From positions 1 to 64,000 of IMG/VR virus record IMGVR_UViG_3300036944_001289: a DNA stretch of 64,000 nucleotides; one strand, written 5' to 3'. Below the pieces are notes generated by a model, which searched no databases, was not told the DNA's origin, and saw only the letters and a program-made list of their open reading frames with translations. Shown piece after piece: positions 2,597 through 44,545 of this stretch (position 1 is its first letter; each line of letters begins with the position of its first letter). Made by a program: the position numbers and the translations under genes.

Positions 2597-3865
2597 TTAT
2601 TTAATAATACCCATACTCTTTAGCAGGGTCAGATTCATTAAGTTCTCATTCACGCTGGCTCCATCATTACCATTAGCTCCAGCACCACCAGTAATAACTG
2701 TACTTGGTACTGCAACTTTAGCAAGCGCCGCAGCAACATCTACGTCACGTCGTGCAGCAATCTCAGCTAGTACCTTCTTCTCTTCTGTGAGAGCACCACC
2801 CAACGCAATGCGTTCCTTTTCAGCTTTCGCAAGTTCAATAACTTGTTTAGCCGTTTCTTCAGCAGCCTGACGTTCAAGTCGTGCCACTTCAAGCTGTTTC
2901 ATGGCCGCAGTCTCAGCAGTTTCTTTATCAAGCTTTGCTACTGATAGGAGCTTTGCAGCTTCAGTTTCAGCAACCTGTTTTTCTTTCTCAGCACGAATAA
3001 CAGCCTCAGCCTTTTCACGATTTGACTTAGCTTCGGTCTCAGCCTTCTCACGAAGACCCTTCTCGATAATCATCAAACGCTGCTGAACCTCACCTTCACG
3101 TTGCGCTTTTGCAGATTCTGCCTGTAAAAATGCTTCCTTCTTTTGTGCAAATTGCTTTCGAGTCTGCTCATCGTATTCAGTCTCAGTAATAGAAAACTGG
3201 GTTACATGAATACCGAGGTGTTTGAGTGGTGAGGTTTGTGAAACGATAGGTTTACCATTCTTATCAACTACTACTTCAGTCGCAAGAACTTTAATTGGGT
3301 TACCCTTTTCGTCAATCTGATCTAGAGTTCGTTCAATACGTCGCATCTCATACAAACCTGCATTCATCTGTTCATATGCAACATTATTAAATTCAGACTT
3401 ACGAGCAGCCTGATTCTCAGATGCACTCATCAGAGGTCCAGAGGCCTTAAGAACGTTTGAAAGATGTCCCCAAACTGAGTTCTTAATAGCATCGTGATTA
3501 CCACCGAAACGGCGATGGAATTCACGCTTATTGTCAACTGTAGGGGGTGATGCAAATGAAATCATAGCATCAACATCTGCGGTACCACCGTCATTAAACG
3601 TTACACGAGTCGACTCATCTGTAGGAGACTCATTCGTGATCTCCCTCGTAAACTCAAACTGCCAGTTACGAGGGTATGTCCAGACAGTGCCGTACCATTT
3701 ACCATACCATCCAGGATTATCAATAATTCGAACCGTTCCATTAGGGTATTGCAGCACCTGCCAATCTTGGTCGTCATTATGACCGACAGCACCACTAAAT
3801 ACAAGGATACCACCAATAACGACAGCACCGACGCTTGCGAGTTTAATTATATTTTTTAGTTCCAT
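2597..3865 (-). CDS. SPFH/band-7 (flotillin-like) membrane protein
   Basis: N-terminal TM helix, SPFH-like core, long AE-rich coiled coil, VAVPSTVITGG tail. Confidence 0.75.
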   Translation of the reverse strand: MELKNIIKLASVGAVVIGGILVFSGAVGHNDDQDWQVLQYPNGTVRIIDNPGWYGKWYGTVWTYPRNWQFEFTREITNESPTDESTRVTFNDGGTADVDAMISFASPPTVDNKREFHRRFGGNHDAIKNSVWGHLSNVLKASGPLMSASENQAARKSEFNNVAYEQMNAGLYEMRRIERTLDQIDEKGNPIKVLATEVVVDKNGKPIVSQTSPLKHLGIHVTQFSITETEYDEQTRKQFAQKKEAFLQAESAKAQREGEVQQRLMIIEKGLREKAETEAKSNREKAEAVIRAEKEKQVAETEAAKLLSVAKLDKETAETAAMKQLEVARLERQAAEETAKQVIELAKAEKERIALGGALTEEKKVLAEIAARRDVDVAAALAKVAVPSTVITGGAGANGNDGASVNENLMNLTLLKSMGIIK

Positions 3866-10444: not shown

Positions 10445-12031
10445 TCAGAGAGCTTTATTAATGCTCTCATTTACTCGCGCTCGAATATCGGCTAGAGTAT
10501 AATCAATCAACAGCTTACCATCTCGGAAGACCTCTTTAAGATCGCAGTTATCAGCAACGACCTTGGTAACTTCGTCGTGGAGGACATAATCACCTTTGTC
10601 GTTCTTAAACACTGCAAGATAACCCTTAGCAGACTTCTTCATACCACCATCAGTCTTAGGATCCTTAAAGATCGCACGCTCTTCACCATTTACGGTTACC
10701 GATGTTGCCTTCATTGCAAATCCAAGAGTATCACGAGTACAATACTGATAGGTATAAGAACCAACACCGAGAACGACGTTAGTACTTGCGAACCCTTTCT
10801 TCATCAACCCTTCCATGATTTGATAGGCGCGCTCGAGTGTAATCGAGTCACCATAAATCAAACCAATGTGAGAGTCAAGAACTTTGAATCCTTTCTCAGT
10901 TACAGTACCACCGAACGTGTCCCAAAGGCACTGGATAGCTCCTTTGAATTCAGCTTCGGTGATCTCTTTTCCTGGTATCGCTTTAATCAGTGATGTGTTA
11001 TCGTCAAGGAAAATCTTACTGTCCTTTCGAATGACTTCGTCTTCATTGTAACCACAGATGATTCGAATAGGATCGCCAGAGTCAGGTCGGATTACAACCT
11101 TATCTCCAACAGGTCCACCTTTACGAGCGAGAATCTCGTTCTTAAGAGCAGGTAAGAATACTGTGATAACCTGCCAGAAGTCCCAAGTGTCGGATACAAT
11201 TGAGACAATACCTTGTGGATATAACTCAGTAATAAGACGTTTAAAGGTATAGAGTTCATCACCTTGACCACCAGCACACATTACAGAGTGTTCAGTCGCA
11301 GGTACCGAACAACCGACTAGCTCCTTATCAGAGTTAGCATTATAGTAATCTTCGAGTAGATCGATCGCAGGGATCGTATCGGTACCGAGATTACCAGCTG
11401 CAAGGTGAGCAGCACCAGACATTACCGCGTCCTGAGGGCTAGACATACCACGGAAGCTAAAATCGTGAGCTTGGAAGTCAACGAAATTAACATCAGCACC
11501 GGTAAGCTTTGCATATCTCTTAAGAAGAATACGATACTTACGAGCGGTTGTAGCACTGGTACAAGGCTTCCAAATCATATTACTCAAGATAGTCTCGAGA
11601 TAATTAGTAAGCCAAAAAGCACCTGAGGTGGTATTTTCGATAACAAACACCGGAATCTTCTCATCAACTACAGCACCCTCAGGTAGGGCACTAATAGAGA
11701 TTGGAAGATAACCGATGTCGTGTAACTGTTCGATATGATCAATAGGTACAGCTCCAGTACCTAGGTAGTTATCAAGACGGCGCTTATACTTCTTTATAAC
11801 CTTTTCTTTAGGCTGATTGAAGAACTCCTGATTAAAGGTATCAATAAGCAACCACTTTAGAAGATATTGAAGGCCAAAGAATACTACTTTATTATCAACT
11901 CCTTTTACTTTTGCAGCGTGTCTAGTAGAACGCGGGGTAAAGTTAGAGTAAACCAACTCAGTACCTACTGGATATTGACGACGATGGTCGGCTTTATAGC
12001 CATCGATTAGATTTAGCGGATTAGTTTTCAT
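10445..12031 (-). CDS. nadV: Nicotinamide phosphoribosyltransferase-like protein (NadV/Namat)
   Basis: DGYKADH, YSNFTPRS, HDFSFRG, SVPATEHSVM, SIVSDTWD, IRPDSGDP, GLIYGDSIT, KDPKTD..KKSAKG. Confidence 0.93.
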   Translation of the reverse strand: MKTNPLNLIDGYKADHRRQYPVGTELVYSNFTPRSTRHAAKVKGVDNKVVFFGLQYLLKWLLIDTFNQEFFNQPKEKVIKKYKRRLDNYLGTGAVPIDHIEQLHDIGYLPISISALPEGAVVDEKIPVFVIENTTSGAFWLTNYLETILSNMIWKPCTSATTARKYRILLKRYAKLTGADVNFVDFQAHDFSFRGMSSPQDAVMSGAAHLAAGNLGTDTIPAIDLLEDYYNANSDKELVGCSVPATEHSVMCAGGQGDELYTFKRLITELYPQGIVSIVSDTWDFWQVITVFLPALKNEILARKGGPVGDKVVIRPDSGDPIRIICGYNEDEVIRKDSKIFLDDNTSLIKAIPGKEITEAEFKGAIQCLWDTFGGTVTEKGFKVLDSHIGLIYGDSITLERAYQIMEGLMKKGFASTNVVLGVGSYTYQYCTRDTLGFAMKATSVTVNGEERAIFKDPKTDGGMKKSAKGYLAVFKNDKGDYVLHDEVTKVVADNCDLKEVFRDGKLLIDYTLADIRARVNESINKAL

Positions 12032-12154
12032 ATGTTTGTGTTGAGTCTCGATGCTTTTACAGAATCAAATCACTTGAATGATTCATATATACGCATCGAT
12101 CTAACAAAATTATTTTATTAAAGTTCATTTGGAATCAACTACCCAAGCGTGACT

Positions 12155-13207
12155 TTATAGATGTCTATAGAAGTCAATCTGATTGCCGTTATCACGCGTC
12201 ATGGTAAACGTCATATCATCTAGTTTATATATAAAAATACCTTTTTCGGTATCAACATTGATAATATTATCTTCACCAACTTCAACACGGCGGTCAGGTT
12301 TTTTGTCAGCTTTACTATAAACTGTAAAATGGTGGGTCTTACCAAGCGGTAGACCTTCGATAATATTCGGATAAATTGCGTTTTTATCTTGAATTTTACC
12401 TTTAACAGCAAACGTAATACTAAAGTTAGCTTCACTATCACTACCAGGTTTAGCATTGAGCATCTCAAGAGCTTTGATAGGGTCTTCTTTATATCGATTC
12501 ATCTCTTCGACAAGTGCTTTAAGAATATCGAAGTTGAATGAATCAAACAACCCAGAGATACGACAGATAAGCTGAATGTGTTTCTTCTCATTAAGCATCG
12601 CATTACAATACTCGACGATGAAGTTTTGATCAAGTCCACGATAATCGAGCATATAATACAAACGACCAGGGCGATTGCGCATATGCTGGTTAATACGCCA
12701 TTTATCATTACAAGTAATTACAAAAAGCTTCTTCGTAGGGTATACCCCATCAAGAAGCGTCAATACTTGCTCTTGTTTTTCGTCATCGTATATCTTCTCA
12801 AACTCATCAAACATTACAACTGCAGGTTCATCAATATTCTGAATAAGCTGATTAAACTCATCACCGCACCAATCGTTATTAATGATTATGGTAGGATAAC
12901 CAAGTTTAGCACACTCAATCGAAAGACTCTTAGCAAGAAGAGTTTTACCACTGCCTTTTTCTCCAGCGAGTAAAACTCCTGTGCTGCATTCGCGGTCAAG
13001 AAACGTATTGATAATACGTTTAGAACGATCAGGAGTATTGCCAAAAATGTGGCTTGGCATTTTAAATCGATCAACTATTTCAAGGTAAAGCCCGGTCTGA
13101 GGGTGTTCCTTTACGGCATAGTTTCCGACAGGAAGTTTCTTTTCAATCGAAAGAGCAGCTTCGTTTTTGACTGAAACACTGGAACCGGTGATAATATAAT
13201 GGCTCAT
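12155..13207 (-). CDS. AAA+ ATPase
   Basis: GEKGSGKT, MFDEFEK, NRPGR. Confidence 0.88.
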   Translation of the reverse strand: MSHYIITGSSVSVKNEAALSIEKKLPVGNYAVKEHPQTGLYLEIVDRFKMPSHIFGNTPDRSKRIINTFLDRECSTGVLLAGEKGSGKTLLAKSLSIECAKLGYPTIIINNDWCGDEFNQLIQNIDEPAVVMFDEFEKIYDDEKQEQVLTLLDGVYPTKKLFVITCNDKWRINQHMRNRPGRLYYMLDYRGLDQNFIVEYCNAMLNEKKHIQLICRISGLFDSFNFDILKALVEEMNRYKEDPIKALEMLNAKPGSDSEANFSITFAVKGKIQDKNAIYPNIIEGLPLGKTHHFTVYSKADKKPDRRVEVGEDNIINVDTEKGIFIYKLDDMTFTMTRDNGNQIDFYRHL

Positions 13208-13214
13208 AATTGTA

Positions 13215-14102
13215 TTATAATTTTAATTTATTTCCTGGTAGTACATCTTTGGATGCAATAACAGCATCTAACATTTCATTAAGATCGTAGAATATCTTCG
13301 CATCTGGGTTTCTGAGTTTGGTTTGAATTTCTACATCACGTTTACGTTTAAATTCTGGGTGTATGCCAATAAAGTGTGCTTTATATCCAAACAATCCAAG
13401 TCCATATAAAGAAATCGGTGCTAGTGTTTCATTACTAAACCAGAATATTACTTGCTTGGCTGCAACTAAATGTTCGAACTCCCATTTAATTTGTTCTTCT
13501 TCCATCGTGCTATCAAGTACGTTAAAGTCATATCGACGAGGATTAAATACATCGAAATGAGGAGTAAGTTTATCAGCAGCAATTTGTTGCCAATCGACTG
13601 CATTAGATATAGAACCAGCTAAGAAAATAGAATCGAGATCAGAGAGATGACCATTATAGATATCTGTAGGTTTAAGATAAACCTTTTCGCGTCTCTCTTT
13701 TTCGATTCGAGTAACAACCTGCTCTAGTATATAATAGCTAGAGCGAAGACCGGCACGGTCACAAAGGAAGATGTTATAATATATCTTACCTTCGTTTCCA
13801 TATGGGAGAGCGATAGGATTCTTATTGATAGAGTCTATCTCGATACCCTTTTCAGCACAATAAACTCTGATCGATGTATGTCTCTCTACTTTACTAGCAG
13901 TAAATATCACTACGTAAAATCCAAGAGCTTTGCATCTCTTCATGAGATCAATTACAAACTCATGTGTCGTGCCTTTACCGTGCCAATCATATAAGGTATC
14001 ATCATAATCAACTGCTATGATGAGTCTATTATGCTTTTGATATTCTTTGTATAGACGTTCTATACAAAGTTCATTAGAAAGATATGGGTCGCTTTTGGTC
14101 AT
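13215..14102 (-). CDS. HAD-like domain fused to nucleoside 2-deoxyribosyltransferase-like (NDT/TIR-fold) domain
   Basis: N-term IAVDYDDTL...IFTAS...CDRAG; C-term IFLAGSI..DWQ..FNPRR..EQIKWE. Confidence 0.75.
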   Translation of the reverse strand: MTKSDPYLSNELCIERLYKEYQKHNRLIIAVDYDDTLYDWHGKGTTHEFVIDLMKRCKALGFYVVIFTASKVERHTSIRVYCAEKGIEIDSINKNPIALPYGNEGKIYYNIFLCDRAGLRSSYYILEQVVTRIEKERREKVYLKPTDIYNGHLSDLDSIFLAGSISNAVDWQQIAADKLTPHFDVFNPRRYDFNVLDSTMEEEQIKWEFEHLVAAKQVIFWFSNETLAPISLYGLGLFGYKAHFIGIHPEFKRKRDVEIQTKLRNPDAKIFYDLNEMLDAVIASKDVLPGNKLKL

Positions 14103-14166
14103 AAATTTTGTGTAATTTTACGTCTAACATCTATATCAAAGAATATAAATTTATCAGTTATTTTCA

Positions 14167-15033
14167 TTAAAATGTAAGATTATGGATATATAACTTATTT
14201 TTATTCTTCTCTTCGATATTTAAATCGGTACTGTAGCTATTAGTTGTATAAATCTCATCTATACCATTTGCAAATAGAGTATCAACACCTTGACTAAAAA
14301 TACCATGAGTAACGTATAGAATCACATTACCTGCATTCTTTTTCTTAAGAGATTTAGCGAGTTCGATAAAGGTGCGACCACCATCGCAAATATCATCTGC
14401 AATTACTATATCAGCACCATTAAGATCATCCGCAAATATAGAGGTTTCAATAATTTTACCTGTTGCAAGGTCACGAAGTTTATCAGCACGAATAAATCGA
14501 ATATGGTCAAAATACTTAGCAACATTTGCAGTCTTTTTATTTGCACCTGCATCTGGACTTACAAATAGTACACCCTGTAATACACGTTTACAAAACGCTG
14601 TAAAATCATTAATTATTTGTACCTGGTCGATAATTTTAACTCGATCGATTAATGCACCAGTAACATCGCTATGAGGATCACATACGATTACACGATCAAA
14701 ATTCAAATTATTAATAAATTTAGCAAATACCTTTAGGCTATGTGGTTCACCTTTACAGCATGTACGATCTTGTCGGGCATATGGTACATAAGGTATAATA
14801 AGCTCAATACTCGATTTATCACCATAAGTTATCTGTTCATTCTCGATAGCATCCTTAATGAGAGCAAGGGCAAATAAGTCATCGCTATTACGAATACGCG
14901 CTTCAATACGAATTGTATCTTGCGTATTAAAAAACCCAAAGTTTGGTTGAGTTTGTATAAGAACCTCACCACCTGGGAAGGTAGCTTGCTTAATCACAAG
15001 TTCATGTGTTCCTTTATATGTTCGAAAGTTCAT
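14167..15033 (-). CDS. prs: Ribose-phosphate pyrophosphokinase-like protein (PRS/Adps)
   Basis: FPGGE, PYVPYARQDR, DPHS, SPDAGA, DDICDGGRTF, YVTHGIFS. Confidence 0.92.
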   Translation of the reverse strand: MNFRTYKGTHELVIKQATFPGGEVLIQTQPNFGFFNTQDTIRIEARIRNSDDLFALALIKDAIENEQITYGDKSSIELIIPYVPYARQDRTCCKGEPHSLKVFAKFINNLNFDRVIVCDPHSDVTGALIDRVKIIDQVQIINDFTAFCKRVLQGVLFVSPDAGANKKTANVAKYFDHIRFIRADKLRDLATGKIIETSIFADDLNGADIVIADDICDGGRTFIELAKSLKKKNAGNVILYVTHGIFSQGVDTLFANGIDEIYTTNSYSTDLNIEEKNKNKLYIHNLTF

Positions 15034-15097
15034 GTAAGATATTGTAATATTGTTCCCTTGGATTAGTTAAAACTAACACAGAGTAAGCTGAATTATA

Positions 15098-15138
15098 AAA
15101 AAAGGTGGCAGGGCCCGCTACCTCGCGAATGCCCTGCC
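15098..15138 (-). terminator. Intrinsic terminator ending the ncRNA downstream of 15452-16192
   Basis: GGCAGGGC...GCCCTGCC stem followed by a T7 tract on the minus strand. Confidence 0.75.
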
Positions 15139-15450
15139 TGTTGTCATATTTTCATAATATGTGACAAAGAGCGTTTTTTAGCTCTGTTCTTTAAAATGCT
15201 TTGTGTTTTTAGCTTAATACCAGCACTCTACCACTAAGTTACCTGACCATATATACTAACCGGAAATTGGGGGTCAGGAGCTGATTTGAACAGCCGCATC
15301 TGGTTTAAATAGACACTATCTTTTAAAGAACCTTCTTAGTCGGGTTTTGAGCCTCGAGTGAATAGCCTTAGTTTGAACTTGAGCATGACCGGTTTAGACC
15401 CGGATTTCACTTTGAGCCTGGATACTCCCGAAGGAGCCACCCGAAATTGT
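15098..15450 (-). ncRNA. Putative ~350-nt structured RNA with a circularly permuted tRNA-like core (15219-15304)
   Basis: T-arm GGCTG-TTCAAAT-CAGCT, acceptor CCTGACC/GGTCAGG closed by a linker, D-arm ACTT-AGTGGTA-GAGT, closing stems ACCAG/CTGGT and GTTCTTTAAAA/TTTTAAAGAAC. Confidence 0.75.
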
Positions 15451-15451
15451 T

Positions 15452-16192
15452 TTAGTTGAAGATATAGCTAATCAACTTAGCACCGATCTTCTTATTCTTA
15501 TCGACCTCGGTATCGTTAGCACGAGAACGGGCCTGCTTAACTGCACGAGTCAAAGTATCAACTCGACTAAGATACTCAGACTTTTGCGCAGGAGTAATAA
15601 GACCAGACCACTCTTGCTCTTGAATATTACCGATAACCTTGTCTTCATCAACAAGCTGAGTCTGGGCAGGGTGCTTGTCGGTCGCAGGATATAGAACGAT
15701 TACTGACTTTTCCTTCTTCGTACGAGTCTTATTAATTGTACGGGCTTGATAGATACCACCACCACGAGCAGCATCATGTGTAAATCCTTTAGCAGGGTCG
15801 AGAGTAGGAATAGAAAGGATTAAAGAATTAATCTCAATTAGACGCTTCTCAAGTTCAAGAAGAGCGGTAGCAGGTACATCCTTAGCAATTACAGTGCCAT
15901 CTTCAAGAGTAATATCACCGCGAGCTGCAGTATTAGTTTCAGCAACCTGATACGAAGCATCGAGAGCCTTGGTAATAAACCCAGCAATAAGCTTCAATTC
16001 CTTATCAACAGTGGTCTGAATATCAAGCTGAGACTCGACCGTTGACTGACCTTCACCGGAAGGTGTAAATACAATCTTCTTCTCTTCGAAGAGATGACGC
16101 TTCTTTTCAAAGGTCGTGGCGAGTTCGTTACGTACCTTGTTTGTCTGATTTTCGAGAGAATTCTCGACTGCGAGTAGTTCGTGTAGCTTCAT
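15452..16192 (-). CDS. Conserved coiled-coil protein of unknown function (MKLHELLAVE...VPATALLELEK...ATDKHPAQ)
   Basis: 246 aa, high-expression-like codon usage, own promoter motif, followed by structured RNA. Confidence 0.8.
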   Translation of the reverse strand: MKLHELLAVENSLENQTNKVRNELATTFEKKRHLFEEKKIVFTPSGEGQSTVESQLDIQTTVDKELKLIAGFITKALDASYQVAETNTAARGDITLEDGTVIAKDVPATALLELEKRLIEINSLILSIPTLDPAKGFTHDAARGGGIYQARTINKTRTKKEKSVIVLYPATDKHPAQTQLVDEDKVIGNIQEQEWSGLITPAQKSEYLSRVDTLTRAVKQARSRANDTEVDKNKKIGAKLISYIFN

Positions 16193-38022: not shown

Positions 38023-38101
38023 TGGTGGGGGCAACCGGAATGCGAGCCGGCATTTTACCTGTGAGAGAGGTATGTCCTTTACGTTTTTAGACGATGTCCC
38101 C
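38023..38101 (-). tRNA. tRNA-Glu(CUC), atypical T-loop
   Basis: TACCT-CT CTC AC-AGGTA, CCA. Confidence 0.75.
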
Positions 38102-40796: not shown

Positions 40797-41087
40797 TTAT
40801 TTAAATTCCGAACTATCATATACATTACATAATAATGTAGCAAGTTCTTCTACTACATCTATTCTTTTTTCGTTTATTGGAGCATAATGACATCCAACAA
40901 ACTCTAAATCATCTATTAATTCACCAAGTAATCTATCCTGACTTTTTTCTCCATTTATAAAAACGGAATATGTTATTGCTCCAAAATTTATAGGATCTCG
41001 TTTTGCAACGAATTCAACATCTTTTATAGATGGATTTTTTTCCTTCATTTTGACTTTAATACGTTCAAGCGTTTCGTTTCTATTCAT
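40797..41087 (-). CDS. hypothetical protein
   Basis: ORF directly downstream of tmRNA. Confidence 0.55.
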   Translation of the reverse strand: MNRNETLERIKVKMKEKNPSIKDVEFVAKRDPINFGAITYSVFINGEKSQDRLLGELIDDLEFVGCHYAPINEKRIDVVEELATLLCNVYDSSEFK

Positions 41088-41091
41088 AAAA

Positions 41092-41479
41092 TGGTGGAGG
41101 TGGCGGGAATTGAACCCGCGTGTTTAACCCAAACCTCACTATTATCTACAAGCTTAGTAGTATTTAATAACTATTTTAAGGTATACTACAACCTGTAGAT
41201 AGTGGTATACATTTATATACTAGAGAATCCCAATGTATAACTGACTCTCTAATCTCACTATATAACGAAATTAAATTTTAGTGAGAATCAAATCTAGTTT
41301 CGATCGCTGTTTATTAAGCAGCGAATGCAAGGGCCTCAACAGGAGCAGCGCTCTTGAAGAAGTTCTTGATGTAATTTACAATGTTGCCATTTGTAGTTTT
41401 GATACTAGTTATAGAGATAATATCAATCTCTGCTTGCAAATAGAGCTGTATCGAATTAAGTCGAATCCTGTACACCCCC
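41092..41479 (-). ncRNA. ssrA: tmRNA
   Basis: 5' GGGGGTGTACAGGATTCGAC, 3' CGCGGGTTCAATTCCCGCCACCTCCACCA with G3:U70; internal tag ORF ...GNIVNYIKNFFKSAAPVEALAFAA*. Confidence 0.93.
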
Positions 41480-41688: not shown

Positions 41689-41767
41689 TGGTGCATCAGA
41701 TGGGATTTTAACCCATGTAAATCTCGTTAAGAGCGAGGACCGTTAAACGAACTCCGGGCACTGATGC
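41689..41767 (-). tRNA. tRNA-Lys(CUU)
   Basis: CTCG-CT CTT AA-CGAG, CCA. Confidence 0.8.
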
Positions 41768-42169: not shown

Positions 42170-42176
42170 ATAAAAA

Positions 42177-42266
42177 TTTATATCTAATGTTCTACCATGT
42201 TGAACTATCCTCCTTGTTCTATTGGGTAAGAGAGGAGCGGACCTTGAACCCGCATCTTTAGATAAA
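42177..42266 (-). ncRNA. Circularly permuted tRNA-like RNA without anticodon
   Basis: ATCTAA, T-arm GCGGG-TTCAAGG-TCCGC, TCCTC/GAGGA acceptor closed by a loop, D-arm GTTC-AACATGGTA-GAAC, TTAGAT. Confidence 0.7.
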
Positions 42267-42326
42267 GAGACTGGGTCTGCATAACAGACCCGAAAGCTCA
42301 CTGTACGCTTGGTACATGAACAAAAA

Positions 42327-42401
42327 TGGCGCTCCCAGTAGGGCTCGAACCTACATAATACGGCTTAGAAGACCGGTGCCTATCCATTAGACTATAGGAG
42401 C
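42327..42401 (-). tRNA. tRNA-Arg(UCU)
   Basis: CGGT-CT TCT AA-GCCG, CCA. Confidence 0.88.
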
Positions 42402-42406
42402 AAAAA

Positions 42407-42493
42407 TGGTGCGTCGGGAGGGACTCGAACCCTCGATGGGTTTAAACCGTGAGCTTAAAAGGCTCGACCTTTCGCCGCTAAGGGAACCGACGC
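42407..42493 (-). tRNA. tRNA-Lys(UUU) with long variable arm
   Basis: GAGC-CT TTT AA-GCTC, then CGGTTTAAACCCATC extra arm. Confidence 0.75.
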
Positions 42494-42502
42494 GTAAAAA
42501 AC

Positions 42503-42640
42503 TAAGTATATTTTTTGCGTTTACTGTGCTACCGTTACACTACTCTCCAATAAAGTATAAATTGGGTGGAGAGGTGGGAATTGAACCCACACTAGCATCT
42601 GTATATGATGATTGCGTTTTATTTTTGCTGTATATACTTA
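42503..42640 (-). ncRNA. Y-RNA-like (YrlA-architecture) RNA: CAGCAA terminal stem + permuted tRNA domain
   Basis: TAAGTATA/TATACTTA stem, TACAGCAA, T-arm GTGGG-TTCAATT-CCCAC, CTCTCCA/TGGAGAG acceptor closed by a loop, D-arm GTGT-AACGGTA-GCAC. Confidence 0.8.
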
Positions 42641-42643
42641 AAG

Positions 42644-42722
42644 TGGTACCCTAGGTGAGATTCGAACTCACACTGAAGAGTGTTTAAGACTCTGGCCATA
42701 CTACCAATTGGGCTACTAGGGC
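42644..42722 (-). tRNA. tRNA-Leu(UAA), short variable loop
   Basis: AGAGT-CT TAA AC-ACTCT, CCA. Confidence 0.85.
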
Positions 42723-43027: not shown

Positions 43028-43099
43028 TGGGTGCAGCGCTGGTACTCGAAACCAGAGAAGGTAGCTTATGAGACTCCTTGGGCAACCTGCCTCACTGCA
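43028..43099 (-). tRNA. tRNA-Met(CAU), atypical short D-arm
   Basis: CT CAT AA loop, TGCAGTG/CGCTGCA acceptor, CCA. Confidence 0.65.
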
Positions 43100-43167
43100 A
43101 TAAATTGGCGATGTAACTAATCTGAAATATTGACTTGTAAGCGTTCTTACCGTTACATTATTAAATA

Positions 43168-43344: not shown

Positions 43345-43418
43345 TGGCTGAGATGGCTGGTAACGCTCCAACTTCTTCGGGGTCAAAGTCCGAGGTAATA
43401 CTTTTATACGACATCTCA
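43345..43418 (-). tRNA. tRNA-Gln(UUG)
   Basis: U1:A72, CT TTG AC loop, G73, CCA. Confidence 0.82.
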
Positions 43419-43741: not shown

Positions 43742-44545
43742 TTATTTGATAGAGAAGTATTTTTTCCATTGTTTATATCTTGGAGATCCACCTTCTCGTT
43801 TATTAGCACCTTTATAAAATTGAGATAGTGAATGGCAGTTTGGACACAACAACTCTAAATTATCTGGAATGTTATTAATGCAATTACCATCTTTATGTTC
43901 TAACTCGATCGGTACTTTACCTGAAAAAGGATTTACTTCGGACCAACCACATTTCATACACCTTGGTCCAAATTTGCGAATTAAGTATCTTCTATATATT
44001 GTGTTATTTGTTTCAATATTTTGAGAAATAACCTTTCCTTCGATTAATAGTGGTTCTAATTCTTTTTCACGCTGGTTTTTTCTGTGTTCAGAAGAGCATA
44101 TTTGTTCACAAAATATTGACGTTTTTGCTACCGGTAAGAAGTCTCGTTCACAATTTAAACACTTTTTGTATTCTTTATATCTTAATGCAGGACCTCTTTT
44201 AAGGAAGCGATTATTGCTAATAAAATTTTCTGTATTTTTATGAACTTTGTTACAAACTCTTGTCTTGTTGATTGTTGTAGCAGCACAACTATTAGAGCAA
44301 AATTTATTTTCGTAACTAAAAAAGGAAATGTTACATGTCAGGCATACTTTTGTATTTTCTTCTATTATTTTTTGCTTTTCTTTTTCTTTACAAGAAGGAC
44401 AATCAAATTTATCTACGTTATGTTTTATATTATGCTTAATATAAATTTTAAGTCTTTTGGTTTCTGTTCCACAATCTTTACACCAGCAAGTAACTGAATC
44501 TTTATTTGTCGCGTTATCGAATTCTTCTTGGTTGAATTTATACAT
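43742..44545 (-). mobile_element. Free-standing HNH homing endonuclease in the tRNA array
   Basis: Multiple CxxC motifs; C..CGW...ELEHKDGN..NN...NLELLCPNCHS. Confidence 0.85.

What the first reader, a model, noticed from the sequence alone, without database searches (positions are those of the whole stretch)
42177..42640. Permuted tRNA mimics keep CCA in the acceptor loop: possible two-piece RNAs
Seen: all three permuted elements have CCA shortly after the acceptor 3' strand: CCTGACC-C-CCA (near 15270), CTCTCCA-C-CCA (near 42565) and TCCTCTC-TTAC-CCA (near 42225). The first two have exact tRNA spacing with a C discriminator. Established: permuted tmRNAs are matured by RNase P and 3' trimming into two-piece RNAs. 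Inference: these may mature into anticodon-less RNAs with free CCA ends. The 42177-42266 element has no CAGCAA stem but is preceded by two hairpins (42273-42316).
Basis: partly seen in the sequence, partly recalled or inferred. Interest (0 to 1): 0.6.

Follow-up and report, generated by a model that had tools for sequence, protein, structure and literature searches.

The report
Phage permuted tRNA mimics with CCA
A 209-kb phage carries three small RNA genes shaped like tRNAs turned inside out, relatives of bacterial Y-RNA-like "YrlA" RNAs; the same design, with a built-in CCA tail that points to cutting by the tRNA enzyme RNase P, recurs unannotated in many phages, often beside an unstudied protein (DUF7873).

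Summary
Three minus-strand elements (E1 ~42181-42264, E2 ~42502-42641, E3 ~15186-15331) read: T arm, acceptor 3' strand, N-CCA, loop, acceptor 5' strand, UA, D arm, closed by a stem made from the two ends. E2 and E3 have exact tRNA spacing (C73 then CCA). E1 is offset by 3 nt and its stem pairs at 6 of 7 positions. They are not tmRNA-like. Their architecture is that of YrlA, the bacterial Y-RNA-like circularly permuted tRNA mimic, which Rfam matches end to end but below threshold. The E3 type lies downstream of a DUF7873 gene in every relative examined: 14 distinct metagenomic phage contigs, 11 cultured phages of Proteobacteria, Actinobacteria and Cyanobacteria, and 1 MAG contig. All 20 base pairs covary. 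The acceptor stem is 7 bp in 31 of 32 elements, and N-CCA sits at the tRNA position in 24 of 32 (chance 1/64 each). "Orphan" copies like E1 and E2 recur inside other phages' tRNA arrays. Some relatives place a Ro60 (TROVE) gene beside DUF7873; this phage has none. Opening by RNase P into a two-piece RNA with a CCA end is inferred from this anatomy and has a published precedent (M. smegmatis YrlA), but no RNA data exist for this phage. Verdict: a new variant of a known kind, moderately to highly interesting.

The parts
42502..42641 (-). E2, complete permuted tRNA-like RNA: 10-bp terminal stem (42641-42632 with 42511-42502), T arm 42590-42574, acceptor 3' strand 42573-42567, C73 42566, CCA 42565-42563, loop to 42550, acceptor 5' strand 42549-42543, UA, D arm 42540-42526. 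It lies between tRNA-Leu (42644-42722) and tRNA-Lys (42407-42493).
   Evidence: Sequence; fold z = -2.4; model R1 73.6 bits; not called as tRNA.
42181..42264 (-). E1, permuted tRNA-like RNA, atypical copy: 7-bp anticodon-like stem (42264-42258 with 42187-42181), 4-nt variable region, T arm 42253-42237, acceptor 3' strand 42236-42230, UUAC, CCA 42225-42223, acceptor 5' strand 42214-42208 (6 of 7 pairs), UA, D arm 42205-42189.
   Evidence: Rfam YrlA 28.8 bits over model positions 1-114; R1 57.9 bits.
42273..42321 (-). Two hairpins upstream of E1 (42321-42296 and 42291-42273); the second is weakly terminator-like.
   Evidence: Fold; terminator scan.
15186..15331 (-). E3, permuted tRNA-like module of the DUF7873-linked RNA: 11-bp terminal stem (15331-15321 with 15196-15186), 4-bp helix (15303-15300 with 15223-15220), T arm 15295-15279, acceptor 3' strand 15278-15272, C73 15271, CCA 15270-15268, loop to 15249, acceptor 5' strand 15248-15242, UA, D arm 15239-15225.
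   Evidence: R1 87.4 bits; counterparts at the same position in all relatives examined, with full covariation.
15333..15445 (-). Conserved 5' domain of the DUF7873-linked RNA: closing helix UUCGGGUG / CACCCGAA-type, a capped hairpin, and roughly 6-nt periodic repeats (CAGGCU / AAGCUC type).
   Evidence: Alignment A5; 84% paired, covariation 0.34 against 0.16 for shuffles.
15096..15138 (-). Sequence-conserved terminal hairpin (GGGC..CGCG-GGUAGCG..GCCC type) followed by a U run; the likely 3' end of the DUF7873 + RNA transcript.
   Evidence: (z = -4.3).
15452..16192 (-). DUF7873 gene (246 aa), directly upstream of E3 on the same strand; candidate protein partner.
   Evidence: Pfam PF25283, E = 9e-68; linkage to the RNA in all relatives examined; no known fold.

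Best explanation
E1, E2 and E3 are genes for phage-encoded, YrlA-like (Y-RNA-like) circularly permuted tRNA mimics. Shown: each folds into a tRNA elbow and acceptor domain (T arm, D arm with GG, U8-A9, 7-bp acceptor stem) in which the acceptor is closed by a loop and the anticodon arm is replaced by a stem formed by the RNA's two ends. The design is conserved with full covariation across phages of unrelated hosts. It comes in two settings: a DUF7873-linked multi-domain RNA (E3 type), and orphan copies embedded in tRNA arrays (E1/E2 type). Inferred: the elements are transcribed with the neighbouring tRNAs (E1, E2) or with the DUF7873 mRNA (E3), and released by the host's tRNA-processing enzymes. 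Because the acceptor is exactly 7 bp, is stacked on a normal T arm, is followed by N-CCA and is preceded mostly by U(-1), host RNase P cuts 5' of the acceptor 5' strand. Exonucleases then trim the A/U-rich loop remnant back to CCA. The product is a nicked, two-piece, anticodon-less tRNA mimic with a free CCA end, held together by the acceptor and terminal stems, as documented for M. smegmatis YrlA. More speculative: the mimic serves as the RNA scaffold or ligand of a protein. That protein would be DUF7873 for E3, with Ro60 in those relatives that encode it. For the orphan copies it could be a host tRNA-binding factor or a host defence enzyme that acts on tRNA ends.
For: Architecture. Rfam YrlA aligns end to end with E1 and with relatives at 27-40 bits. 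Covariation: 97.9% of cells paired, 20 of 20 pairs with compensatory changes, score 0.943 against 0.246 for shuffles and 0.09-0.17 for slid controls; helix 1 was never a search criterion. Conservation next to DUF7873: 14 distinct IMG/VR contigs, 11 of 11 cultured-phage representatives, 1 MAG contig. Orphans in tRNA arrays of other phages. The acceptor-pairing distribution in a protein-free scan is bimodal, 0-5 pairs or 7 of 7. N-CCA in 24 of 32, 7-bp stem in 31 of 32, U(-1) in 21 of 32. Encoded CCA partly tracks the phage's own tRNA genes. Link to Ro60: TROVE genes adjacent in G002, G006/G007 and G012, and about 6 kb away in Rhizobium phage TM30. [quoted passage not shown]
Against: There is no expression or end-mapping data, because only DNA runs hold this phage. 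Rfam YrlA scores are below the gathering score (28.8 against 69). The Ro60-binding motif GNCGAAN0-1G is absent, and the phage has no TROVE gene. Eight of 32 family members lack CCA at the tRNA position, E1 among them, so a CCA end is not obligatory. Some loops are only 6-7 nt (CCA plus 2-3 nt), which may hinder simultaneous CCA docking and cleavage by RNase P. C73, the commonest discriminator, is not the best RNase P context. DUF7873 has no recognisable RNA-binding fold, and its binding to the RNA rests on gene linkage alone.
Confidence: 0.7

Rival explanations
1. The elements are YrlA-like scaffolds that stay closed. On this view the loop CCA is not a future 3' end but a conserved contact, for a protein that recognises tRNA 3' ends or for an RNA-RNA pairing.
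For: Most characterised YrlAs are not cut and lack a free CCA. Several family members have loops of only 6-7 nt. Eight of 32 lack CCA yet keep the perfect stem.
Against: An exact 7-bp stem, N-CCA at precisely positions 73-76, a U(-1) preference and A/U-rich trailers are the hallmarks of an RNase P substrate. The one YrlA with a 7-bp stem is cut in vivo. CCA presence partly follows the tRNA-gene convention of the phage.
Confidence: 0.2
2. The elements are processing punctuation. They exist only to recruit RNase P or RNase Z so that flanking RNAs (the DUF7873 mRNA, neighbouring tRNAs, the 5' repeat domain) get defined ends, as with the MALAT1 mascRNA element. The mimic itself would have no further role.
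For: They lie within polycistronic tRNA arrays or at the 3' side of an mRNA. tRNA-like 3'-end formation is an established mechanism (cited).
Against: An ordinary tRNA would serve as punctuation. Here the permuted order, the terminal stems, the 4-bp helix and the flanking AUYARRYU motif are all conserved. Orphans sit between tRNAs that already supply cleavage sites.
Confidence: 0.07
3. The elements are decayed remains of two adjacent tRNA genes (the 3' half of one and the 5' half of the next) with no function. This is most plausible for E1.
For: YrlA is thought to derive from dimeric tRNAs. Tandem isoacceptor tRNAs imitate the pattern, as in L049 at 40.8 bits. E1 has a mismatch and a displaced CCA.
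Against: There is no trace of the missing tRNA halves. E2 and E3 have 10-11-bp terminal stems. The whole module covaries across very distant phages. Orphans recur in many arrays.
Confidence: 0.03
4. The elements are true permuted genes: either two-piece tmRNAs, or permuted tRNAs that are circularised and re-cut into working tRNAs.
For: The gene order (3' half before 5' half, CCA in between) resembles both. tmRNA_permuted gives a weak local hit on E2 (17.5 bits).
Against: There is no anticodon stem-loop and no bulge-helix-bulge motif. ARAGORN calls no tmRNA or tag peptide in the elements. There is no G3:U70. A full D arm is present, unlike tmRNA. A standard tmRNA is already encoded at 41092-41479 (133.9 bits). 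Bacteria lack the splicing endonuclease needed for circular tRNA intermediates.
Confidence: 0.01

Closest known systems
YrlA (Rfam RF02553), bacterial Y-RNA-like tRNA mimics; closest of all is Mycobacterium smegmatis YrlA
   Same: Same topology: terminal stem from the 5' and 3' ends, short anticodon-like helix, 4-nt variable region, T arm, loop-closed acceptor, UA, D arm (the Rfam model aligns over positions 1-114). M. smegmatis YrlA also has a 7-bp acceptor, is cut by RNase P and carries CCA, so it exists as two pieces. Phage copies are known. Some relatives here have Ro60 next door.
   Different: Scores are far below the Rfam threshold. There is no Ro60 gene in this phage or in most relatives, and no GNCGAAN0-1G Ro-binding motif. 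The 7-bp stem with a fully encoded N-CCA is the rule here but the exception in YrlA. One class is linked to DUF7873 and carries an extra 5' repeat domain and a conserved terminal hairpin. The others are orphans inside tRNA arrays.
Two-piece (circularly permuted) tmRNA of alpha-proteobacteria, cyanobacteria and some beta-proteobacteria
   Same: Gene order with the acceptor 3' strand and CCA ahead of the acceptor 5' strand; maturation by RNase P and 3' trimming into two base-paired pieces.
   Different: No mRNA-like tag region, no pseudoknots, no alanine identity pair. A complete D arm is present. The Rfam score is 17.5 against a threshold of 47. The phage already has a one-piece tmRNA.
Circularly permuted tRNA genes (Cyanidioschyzon merolae and other algae, one archaeon)
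   Same: The 3' half is encoded before the 5' half, and the acceptor is initially closed by a loop that is opened by RNase P or RNase Z.
   Different: Those precursors contain a whole anticodon arm split at a bulge-helix-bulge site and become normal tRNAs through a circular intermediate. Here there is no anticodon loop, and the host domain has no such splicing endonuclease.
tRNA-like 3'-end elements of long noncoding RNAs (MALAT1 mascRNA)
   Same: A tRNA-shaped module inside a longer transcript that is recognised by RNase P.
   Different: mascRNA has normal, unpermuted tRNA topology and is eukaryotic. Here the order is permuted and the module is closed by a terminal stem.

Membership tests
YrlA / bacterial Y RNA (RF02553) | tRNA-like module with T arm, D arm and loop-closed acceptor stem, with the 5' and 3' ends paired in place of the anticodon arm | tested here: met
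   Sequence and folds; end-to-end alignment to the YrlA model; covariation of all four helices.
YrlA / bacterial Y RNA (RF02553) | Score at or above Rfam's gathering threshold (69 bits) | tested here: not met
   E1 28.8 bits; E2 and E3 not reported; relatives 27-40 bits. A phage element directly beside a TROVE gene (L051) also scores only 39.9 bits, so this criterion is weak for phage copies.
YrlA / bacterial Y RNA (RF02553) | Encoded next to a Ro60/Rsr (TROVE) gene | tested here: not met
   No TROVE domain in the complete 209-kb genome. It is met in relatives G002, G006/G007 and G012, where TROVE is adjacent to DUF7873 or to an element, and in Rhizobium phage TM30 at about 6 kb distance.
YrlA / bacterial Y RNA (RF02553) | Ro60-binding motif GNCGAAN0-1G on the 5' strand of the terminal stem | tested here: not met
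   No match in E1, E2 or E3 with their flanks.
YrlA / bacterial Y RNA (RF02553) | Physical binding by Ro60, and tRNA-type modifications (pseudouridine, dihydrouridine) | not testable with these tools
   Needs immunoprecipitation and modification mapping.
Two-piece (permuted) tmRNA | Match to a tmRNA model, with tag reading frame and pseudoknots | tested here: not met
   tmRNA_permuted 17.5 and 15.4 bits against 47. ARAGORN, which searches for tmRNA genes and their tag peptides, reports none in the elements.
Two-piece (permuted) tmRNA | G3:U70 alanine identity pair and a reduced D arm | tested here: not met
   E2 has G3-C70 and E3 has U3-A70; all three have a full 4-bp D stem with GG in the loop.
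Circularly permuted tRNA gene | Complete anticodon stem-loop reconstituted from the transcript ends (bulge-helix-bulge junction) | tested here: not met
   The ends form continuous 7-11-bp stems without an anticodon loop.
Canonical tRNA (RF00005) | Cloverleaf in normal order, detected by ARAGORN or the Rfam tRNA model | tested here: not met
   No call at 42170-42326, 42494-42643 or 15186-15335.
RNase P substrate (functional class) | A 12-bp acceptor/T-stem stack, intact T-loop/D-loop elbow, 3' N-CCA, and a single-stranded 5' leader, usually with U at -1 | tested here: met
   The sequence features are present in E2 and E3 and in most of the family. Actual cleavage was not tested.

The most novel reading that the evidence does not exclude
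DUF7873 and its roughly 350-450-nt downstream RNA (a 6-nt-repeat domain, an RNase-P-opened tRNA mimic with a CCA end, and a conserved terminal hairpin) may form a previously unrecognised phage ribonucleoprotein. It would be functionally allied to, or would replace, the Ro60/Y-RNA machine. Its free CCA end would be used actively: charged, extended or modified, for example as a decoy or sensor for host enzymes and defence toxins that act on tRNA 3' ends. The orphan copies in tRNA arrays (E1, E2) would be stand-alone versions of the same decoy.
Probability: 0.15. Interest if true: 0.85.

Novelty: new variant of a known kind. Interest (0 to 1): 0.66.

Why it matters
tRNA mimics of the YrlA type are known mainly as Ro60 partners in bacteria, and only one (M. 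smegmatis) is known to be opened by RNase P. This work shows a broad phage family in which the RNase P-ready form (7-bp stem plus encoded N-CCA) is the norm. It usually occurs without a phage Ro60. It is either linked to a conserved uncharacterised protein (DUF7873) or scattered through tRNA arrays. The family is unannotated, or in one case probably mis-annotated as a suppressor tRNA, in cultured and tractable phages: Klebsiella and Serratia jumbo phages, Ralstonia RSL1, Rhizobium, Vibrio, Gordonia, Arthrobacter and Rhodococcus phages, and cyanophages. That makes several questions directly testable: what the tRNA-like domain of Y-like RNAs binds, whether an anticodon-less RNA with a CCA end is charged or targeted, and what DUF7873 does. 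It also matters for annotation, because gaps in phage tRNA arrays are not empty.

Tried and rejected
Megablast of the array against GenBank phages found nothing. DUF7873 function: PHROGs none, PDB sequence search none. Foldseek found nothing at E <= 1e-3; its weak top rows were Cas7-family proteins at TM 0.12-0.18, which I considered because of the 6-nt RNA repeats and dropped as unreliable. VIA-align gave only generic helical matches at Z <= 9.5. The ESM Atlas gave only DUF7873 itself. No paper mentions DUF7873. RNAalifold on the MAFFT alignment of the 5' domain was uninformative, so a hand-specified helix was tested instead. A fourth architecture hit at 33479-33433 has no D arm, scores nothing with the model, and is taken as chance. 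The hit over the tmRNA 3' end (41043-41135, 30.3 bits) and the tRNA-tRNA junctions are false positives of the model. A tandem tRNA-Thr pair in a relative (L049, 40.8 bits) shows that isoacceptor junctions can imitate the element. Histidine identity was considered because of C73 and rejected, because position -1 is mostly U and not G. The big protein searches (search for homologous proteins, the search of protein representatives) were not used; tblastn and pattern scans gave enough relatives. Two review papers on bacterial Y RNAs were not held in the library.

Full report
CONTEXT. The window is the first 64 kb of a complete 209,282-bp phage record with direct terminal repeats and 33% G+C. DNA of it is found only in shale-gas metagenomes. 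Positions 37.4-45 kb hold a dense minus-strand array: 24 tRNAs by ARAGORN, three more by Rfam, and a standard one-piece tmRNA at 41092-41479 scoring 133.9 bits. The finding's coordinates cover two gaps in that array. The third element lies 27 kb away.

OBSERVATION. On the minus strand each element reads as follows: 5' stem strand, short variable stretch, T arm (5 bp, loop UUCAAnn), 7-nt acceptor 3' strand, N-CCA, loop, acceptor 5' strand, UA, D arm (4 bp, loop with GG), 3' stem strand. E2 (42502-42641) and E3 (15186-15331) have perfect 7-bp acceptors followed by C then CCA at exactly tRNA positions 73-76. Their terminal stems are 10 and 11 bp. E1 (42181-42264) pairs at 6 of 7 acceptor positions, has CCA displaced by 3 nt, and has a 7-bp anticodon-like stem. 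'CAGCAA' is present only beside E2. None of the three overlaps a tRNA call, so they are not junctions of neighbouring tRNAs.

WHAT THEY RESEMBLE. A below-threshold Rfam scan aligned E1 end to end with YrlA (RF02553), at 28.8 bits against a gathering score of 69. The permuted-tmRNA model gave only 17.5 bits against 47. YrlA is the bacterial 'Y RNA-like' partner of Ro60. Its effector domain is a circularly permuted tRNA with a loop-closed acceptor (PMC4201824; bioRxiv 10.1101/312249). Those papers also supply the key precedent. M. smegmatis YrlA is the one YrlA with a 7-bp acceptor. It is cut by RNase P in vitro and in vivo, is nibbled and receives CCA, and exists as 82-nt and 65-nt halves. [quoted passage not shown]

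COMPARATIVE EVIDENCE, E3 TYPE. E3 lies 120-230 nt downstream of a 246-aa DUF7873 gene (PF25283, E = 9e-68). DUF7873-based searches gave 18 IMG/VR loci from 14 distinct contigs, with 50-63% protein identity and 36-63% G+C. In every distinct contig a scan for T arm, paired acceptor and D arm found the element on the same strand, roughly 120-430 nt after the gene. The scan did not require CCA. Each stem sequence is different but perfectly paired. On a 17-sequence alignment, 97.9% of cells pair and all 20 pairs show compensatory changes. The covariation score is 0.943, against 0.246 for shuffles and 0.09-0.17 for slid controls. The 4-bp anticodon-like helix was never a search criterion and still covaries.

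A covariance model (R1) finds only E3, E2 and E1 in the phage's own genome, at 87, 74 and 58 bits, with junction noise at 30 bits or less. tblastn found DUF7873 in 75 cultured phages, always annotated 'hypothetical protein' and usually within or beside tRNA arrays: Vibrio 29, Rhizobium 12, Gordonia 12, Klebsiella 7, Serratia 6, Arthrobacter 3, Ralstonia RSL1 2, Pseudanabaena 2, Rhodococcus 1, Microcoleus 1. In 11 of 11 representatives R1 hits the unannotated gap after the gene at 35-61 bits, and the hit is duplicated in tandem in actinophages. In Klebsiella phage FBKp24 an annotated 'tRNA-Sup-TTA' overlaps the element. One more instance lies on a contig of a Verrucomicrobia MAG, at 83 bits with G-CCA.

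THE CCA. Of 32 aligned elements, 31 have a 7 of 7 acceptor and 24 have N-CCA at the exact tRNA position (N = C 13, U 4, G 4, A 3). At 1/64 per element this gives P of about 4e-37. For the 15 elements not used to build the model, 8 have it, giving P of about 2e-11. These figures ignore relatedness, but the adjacent stems are entirely different in sequence. Position -1 before the acceptor 5' strand is U in 21 of 32, and the loop after CCA is 75% A+U.

Encoded CCA partly follows each phage's own convention. This phage encodes CCA in 23 of 24 tRNA genes. Actinophages Mimi, NiceHouse and Fryberger encode it in none of 18, and most of their elements lack it, showing U-CUG, U-CUA or A-CGA instead. 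Yet Phendrix (2 of 17 tRNAs) keeps CCA in both elements. In four metagenomic relatives the element has C-CCA while the tRNA right after it has none. So the CCA is selected in its own right, in the manner of a tRNA 3' end.

ORPHANS, E1/E2 TYPE. Whole-record searches found extra copies away from DUF7873 in relatives. L046 lies in a tRNA array with a U-CCA-AU loop; L048 and L051 lack CCA. Among the 80 loci returned, acceptor pairing was bimodal. In 65 loci it was 0-5 pairs (tRNA-His followed by the next tRNA), and in 15 it was 7 of 7. Only 4 of those 15 have DUF7873 upstream. Most of the rest sit between called tRNAs, on the tRNA strand, scoring 42-57 bits. E1 and E2 therefore belong to a recurrent class. 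One caution: a tandem tRNA-Thr pair (L049) scored 40.8 bits, so isoacceptor junctions can imitate the element.

LINK TO Ro60. This phage has no TROVE domain, no RtcB and no CCA-adding enzyme, and the Ro-binding motif GNCGAAN0-1G is absent from all three elements. Four DUF7873 relatives do encode TROVE proteins, right beside these loci. In G012 the order is TROVE, a 78-nt gap, DUF7873, then the RNA. In G002 it is DUF7873, RNA, TROVE, then a second element. In G006/G007 an element lies about 530 nt upstream of TROVE. Rhizobium phage TM30 has TROVE about 6 kb away. The TROVE-adjacent element L051 scores only 39.9 bits on Rfam YrlA, so sub-threshold scores are normal for phage copies.

MECHANISM. 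Shown: a conserved, covarying, permuted tRNA-elbow RNA with a 7-bp acceptor and N-CCA. Inferred: it is co-transcribed with tRNAs or with the DUF7873 mRNA. There is no promoter between DUF7873 and the RNA, and a terminator-like conserved hairpin lies at 15138-15107. RNase P would cleave at acceptor +1, and trimming would stop at CCA, leaving a nicked two-piece mimic. Speculative: DUF7873, Ro60 or a host tRNA-binding or tRNA-end-modifying factor binds it. The DUF7873 model is confident (pLDDT 86), but no known fold or function emerged.

VERDICT. It is a new variant of a known kind, for four reasons: the RNase P-ready form is the rule, a phage Ro60 is usually absent, one class is linked to DUF7873 and extra RNA domains, and orphan copies sit in tRNA arrays.

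Noticed in passing
window 15096-15445 (-), and L009-L024 downstream of each DUF7873 gene: The DUF7873-linked RNA is a roughly 350-450-nt multi-domain unit. It has a 5' domain closed by a UUCGGGUG/CACCCGAA-type helix and filled with ~6-nt periodic repeats (CAGGCU, CAGACU, AAGCUC). The tRNA mimic follows, then the motif AUYARRYU again, and a sequence-conserved terminal hairpin (GGGC..CGCG-GGUAGCG..GCCC) with a U run. No Rfam family matches these parts.
   Followed up: partly
window 43030-43107 (-): An uncalled, aberrant tRNA-like cloverleaf lies in the gap between tRNA-Glu and tRNA-Met. It has a 7-bp acceptor, a 3-nt D loop, anticodon loop CUCAUAA (CAU) and a good T arm, followed by C-CCA-AUUU, the same CCCAAUUU tail as E2 and E3. 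ARAGORN and Rfam both miss it.
   Followed up: partly
window 41092-41479 (-): A standard one-piece tmRNA gene (Rfam 133.9 bits) sits inside the tRNA array. ARAGORN did not report it.
   Followed up: no
window 41692-41767, 38026-38101, 43348-43418 (all -): Rfam calls three tRNAs (37-46 bits) that ARAGORN missed, which brings the array to at least 27 tRNA genes.
   Followed up: no
window 10445-15033 (-): An NAD-salvage-type gene set lies directly downstream of E3: a ribose-phosphate pyrophosphokinase-like gene (14167-15033), a nucleoside 2-deoxyribosyltransferase-like gene (13215-14102), an AAA ATPase (12155-13207) and a NAMPT/NAPRTase-like gene (10445-12031). It possibly rebuilds NAD+ against host defence.
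   Followed up: no
window 43742-44545 (-): An HNH homing-endonuclease-like gene (PHROG 1271) is embedded in the tRNA array. A near-identical contig from another sample ends 292 nt after it (L006).
   Followed up: no
L012, L016, L018, L021, L022 (about 40-60 nt after the element): In several relatives a real tRNA (anticodons CAU, UGU or UCU in those read) sits between the mimic and the terminal hairpin. In the two alignments displayed (L018, L021) its first acceptor pair is mismatched, and in the four loci where ARAGORN called it (L012, L018, L021, L022) it has no encoded CCA, although the element beside it has C-CCA.
   Followed up: partly
L062 3012-3091 (Klebsiella phage vB_KpM_FBKp24, MW394391.1): An annotated 'tRNA-OTHER / tRNA-Sup-TTA' overlaps the permuted element (R1 hit 3046-3161, A-CCA). 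It is probably a mis-annotation of the mimic.
   Followed up: partly
L129 2958-3395 (-): A GOLLD RNA (Rfam 194.9 bits) lies about 700 nt from an orphan permuted element in another phage's tRNA region.
   Followed up: no
L059, L061, L064 (Arthrobacter Mimi, Gordonia Phendrix, Rhodococcus NiceHouse): Actinophages carry two tandem permuted elements after DUF7873. Their tRNA genes typically end N-C-x-x without CCA.
   Followed up: partly
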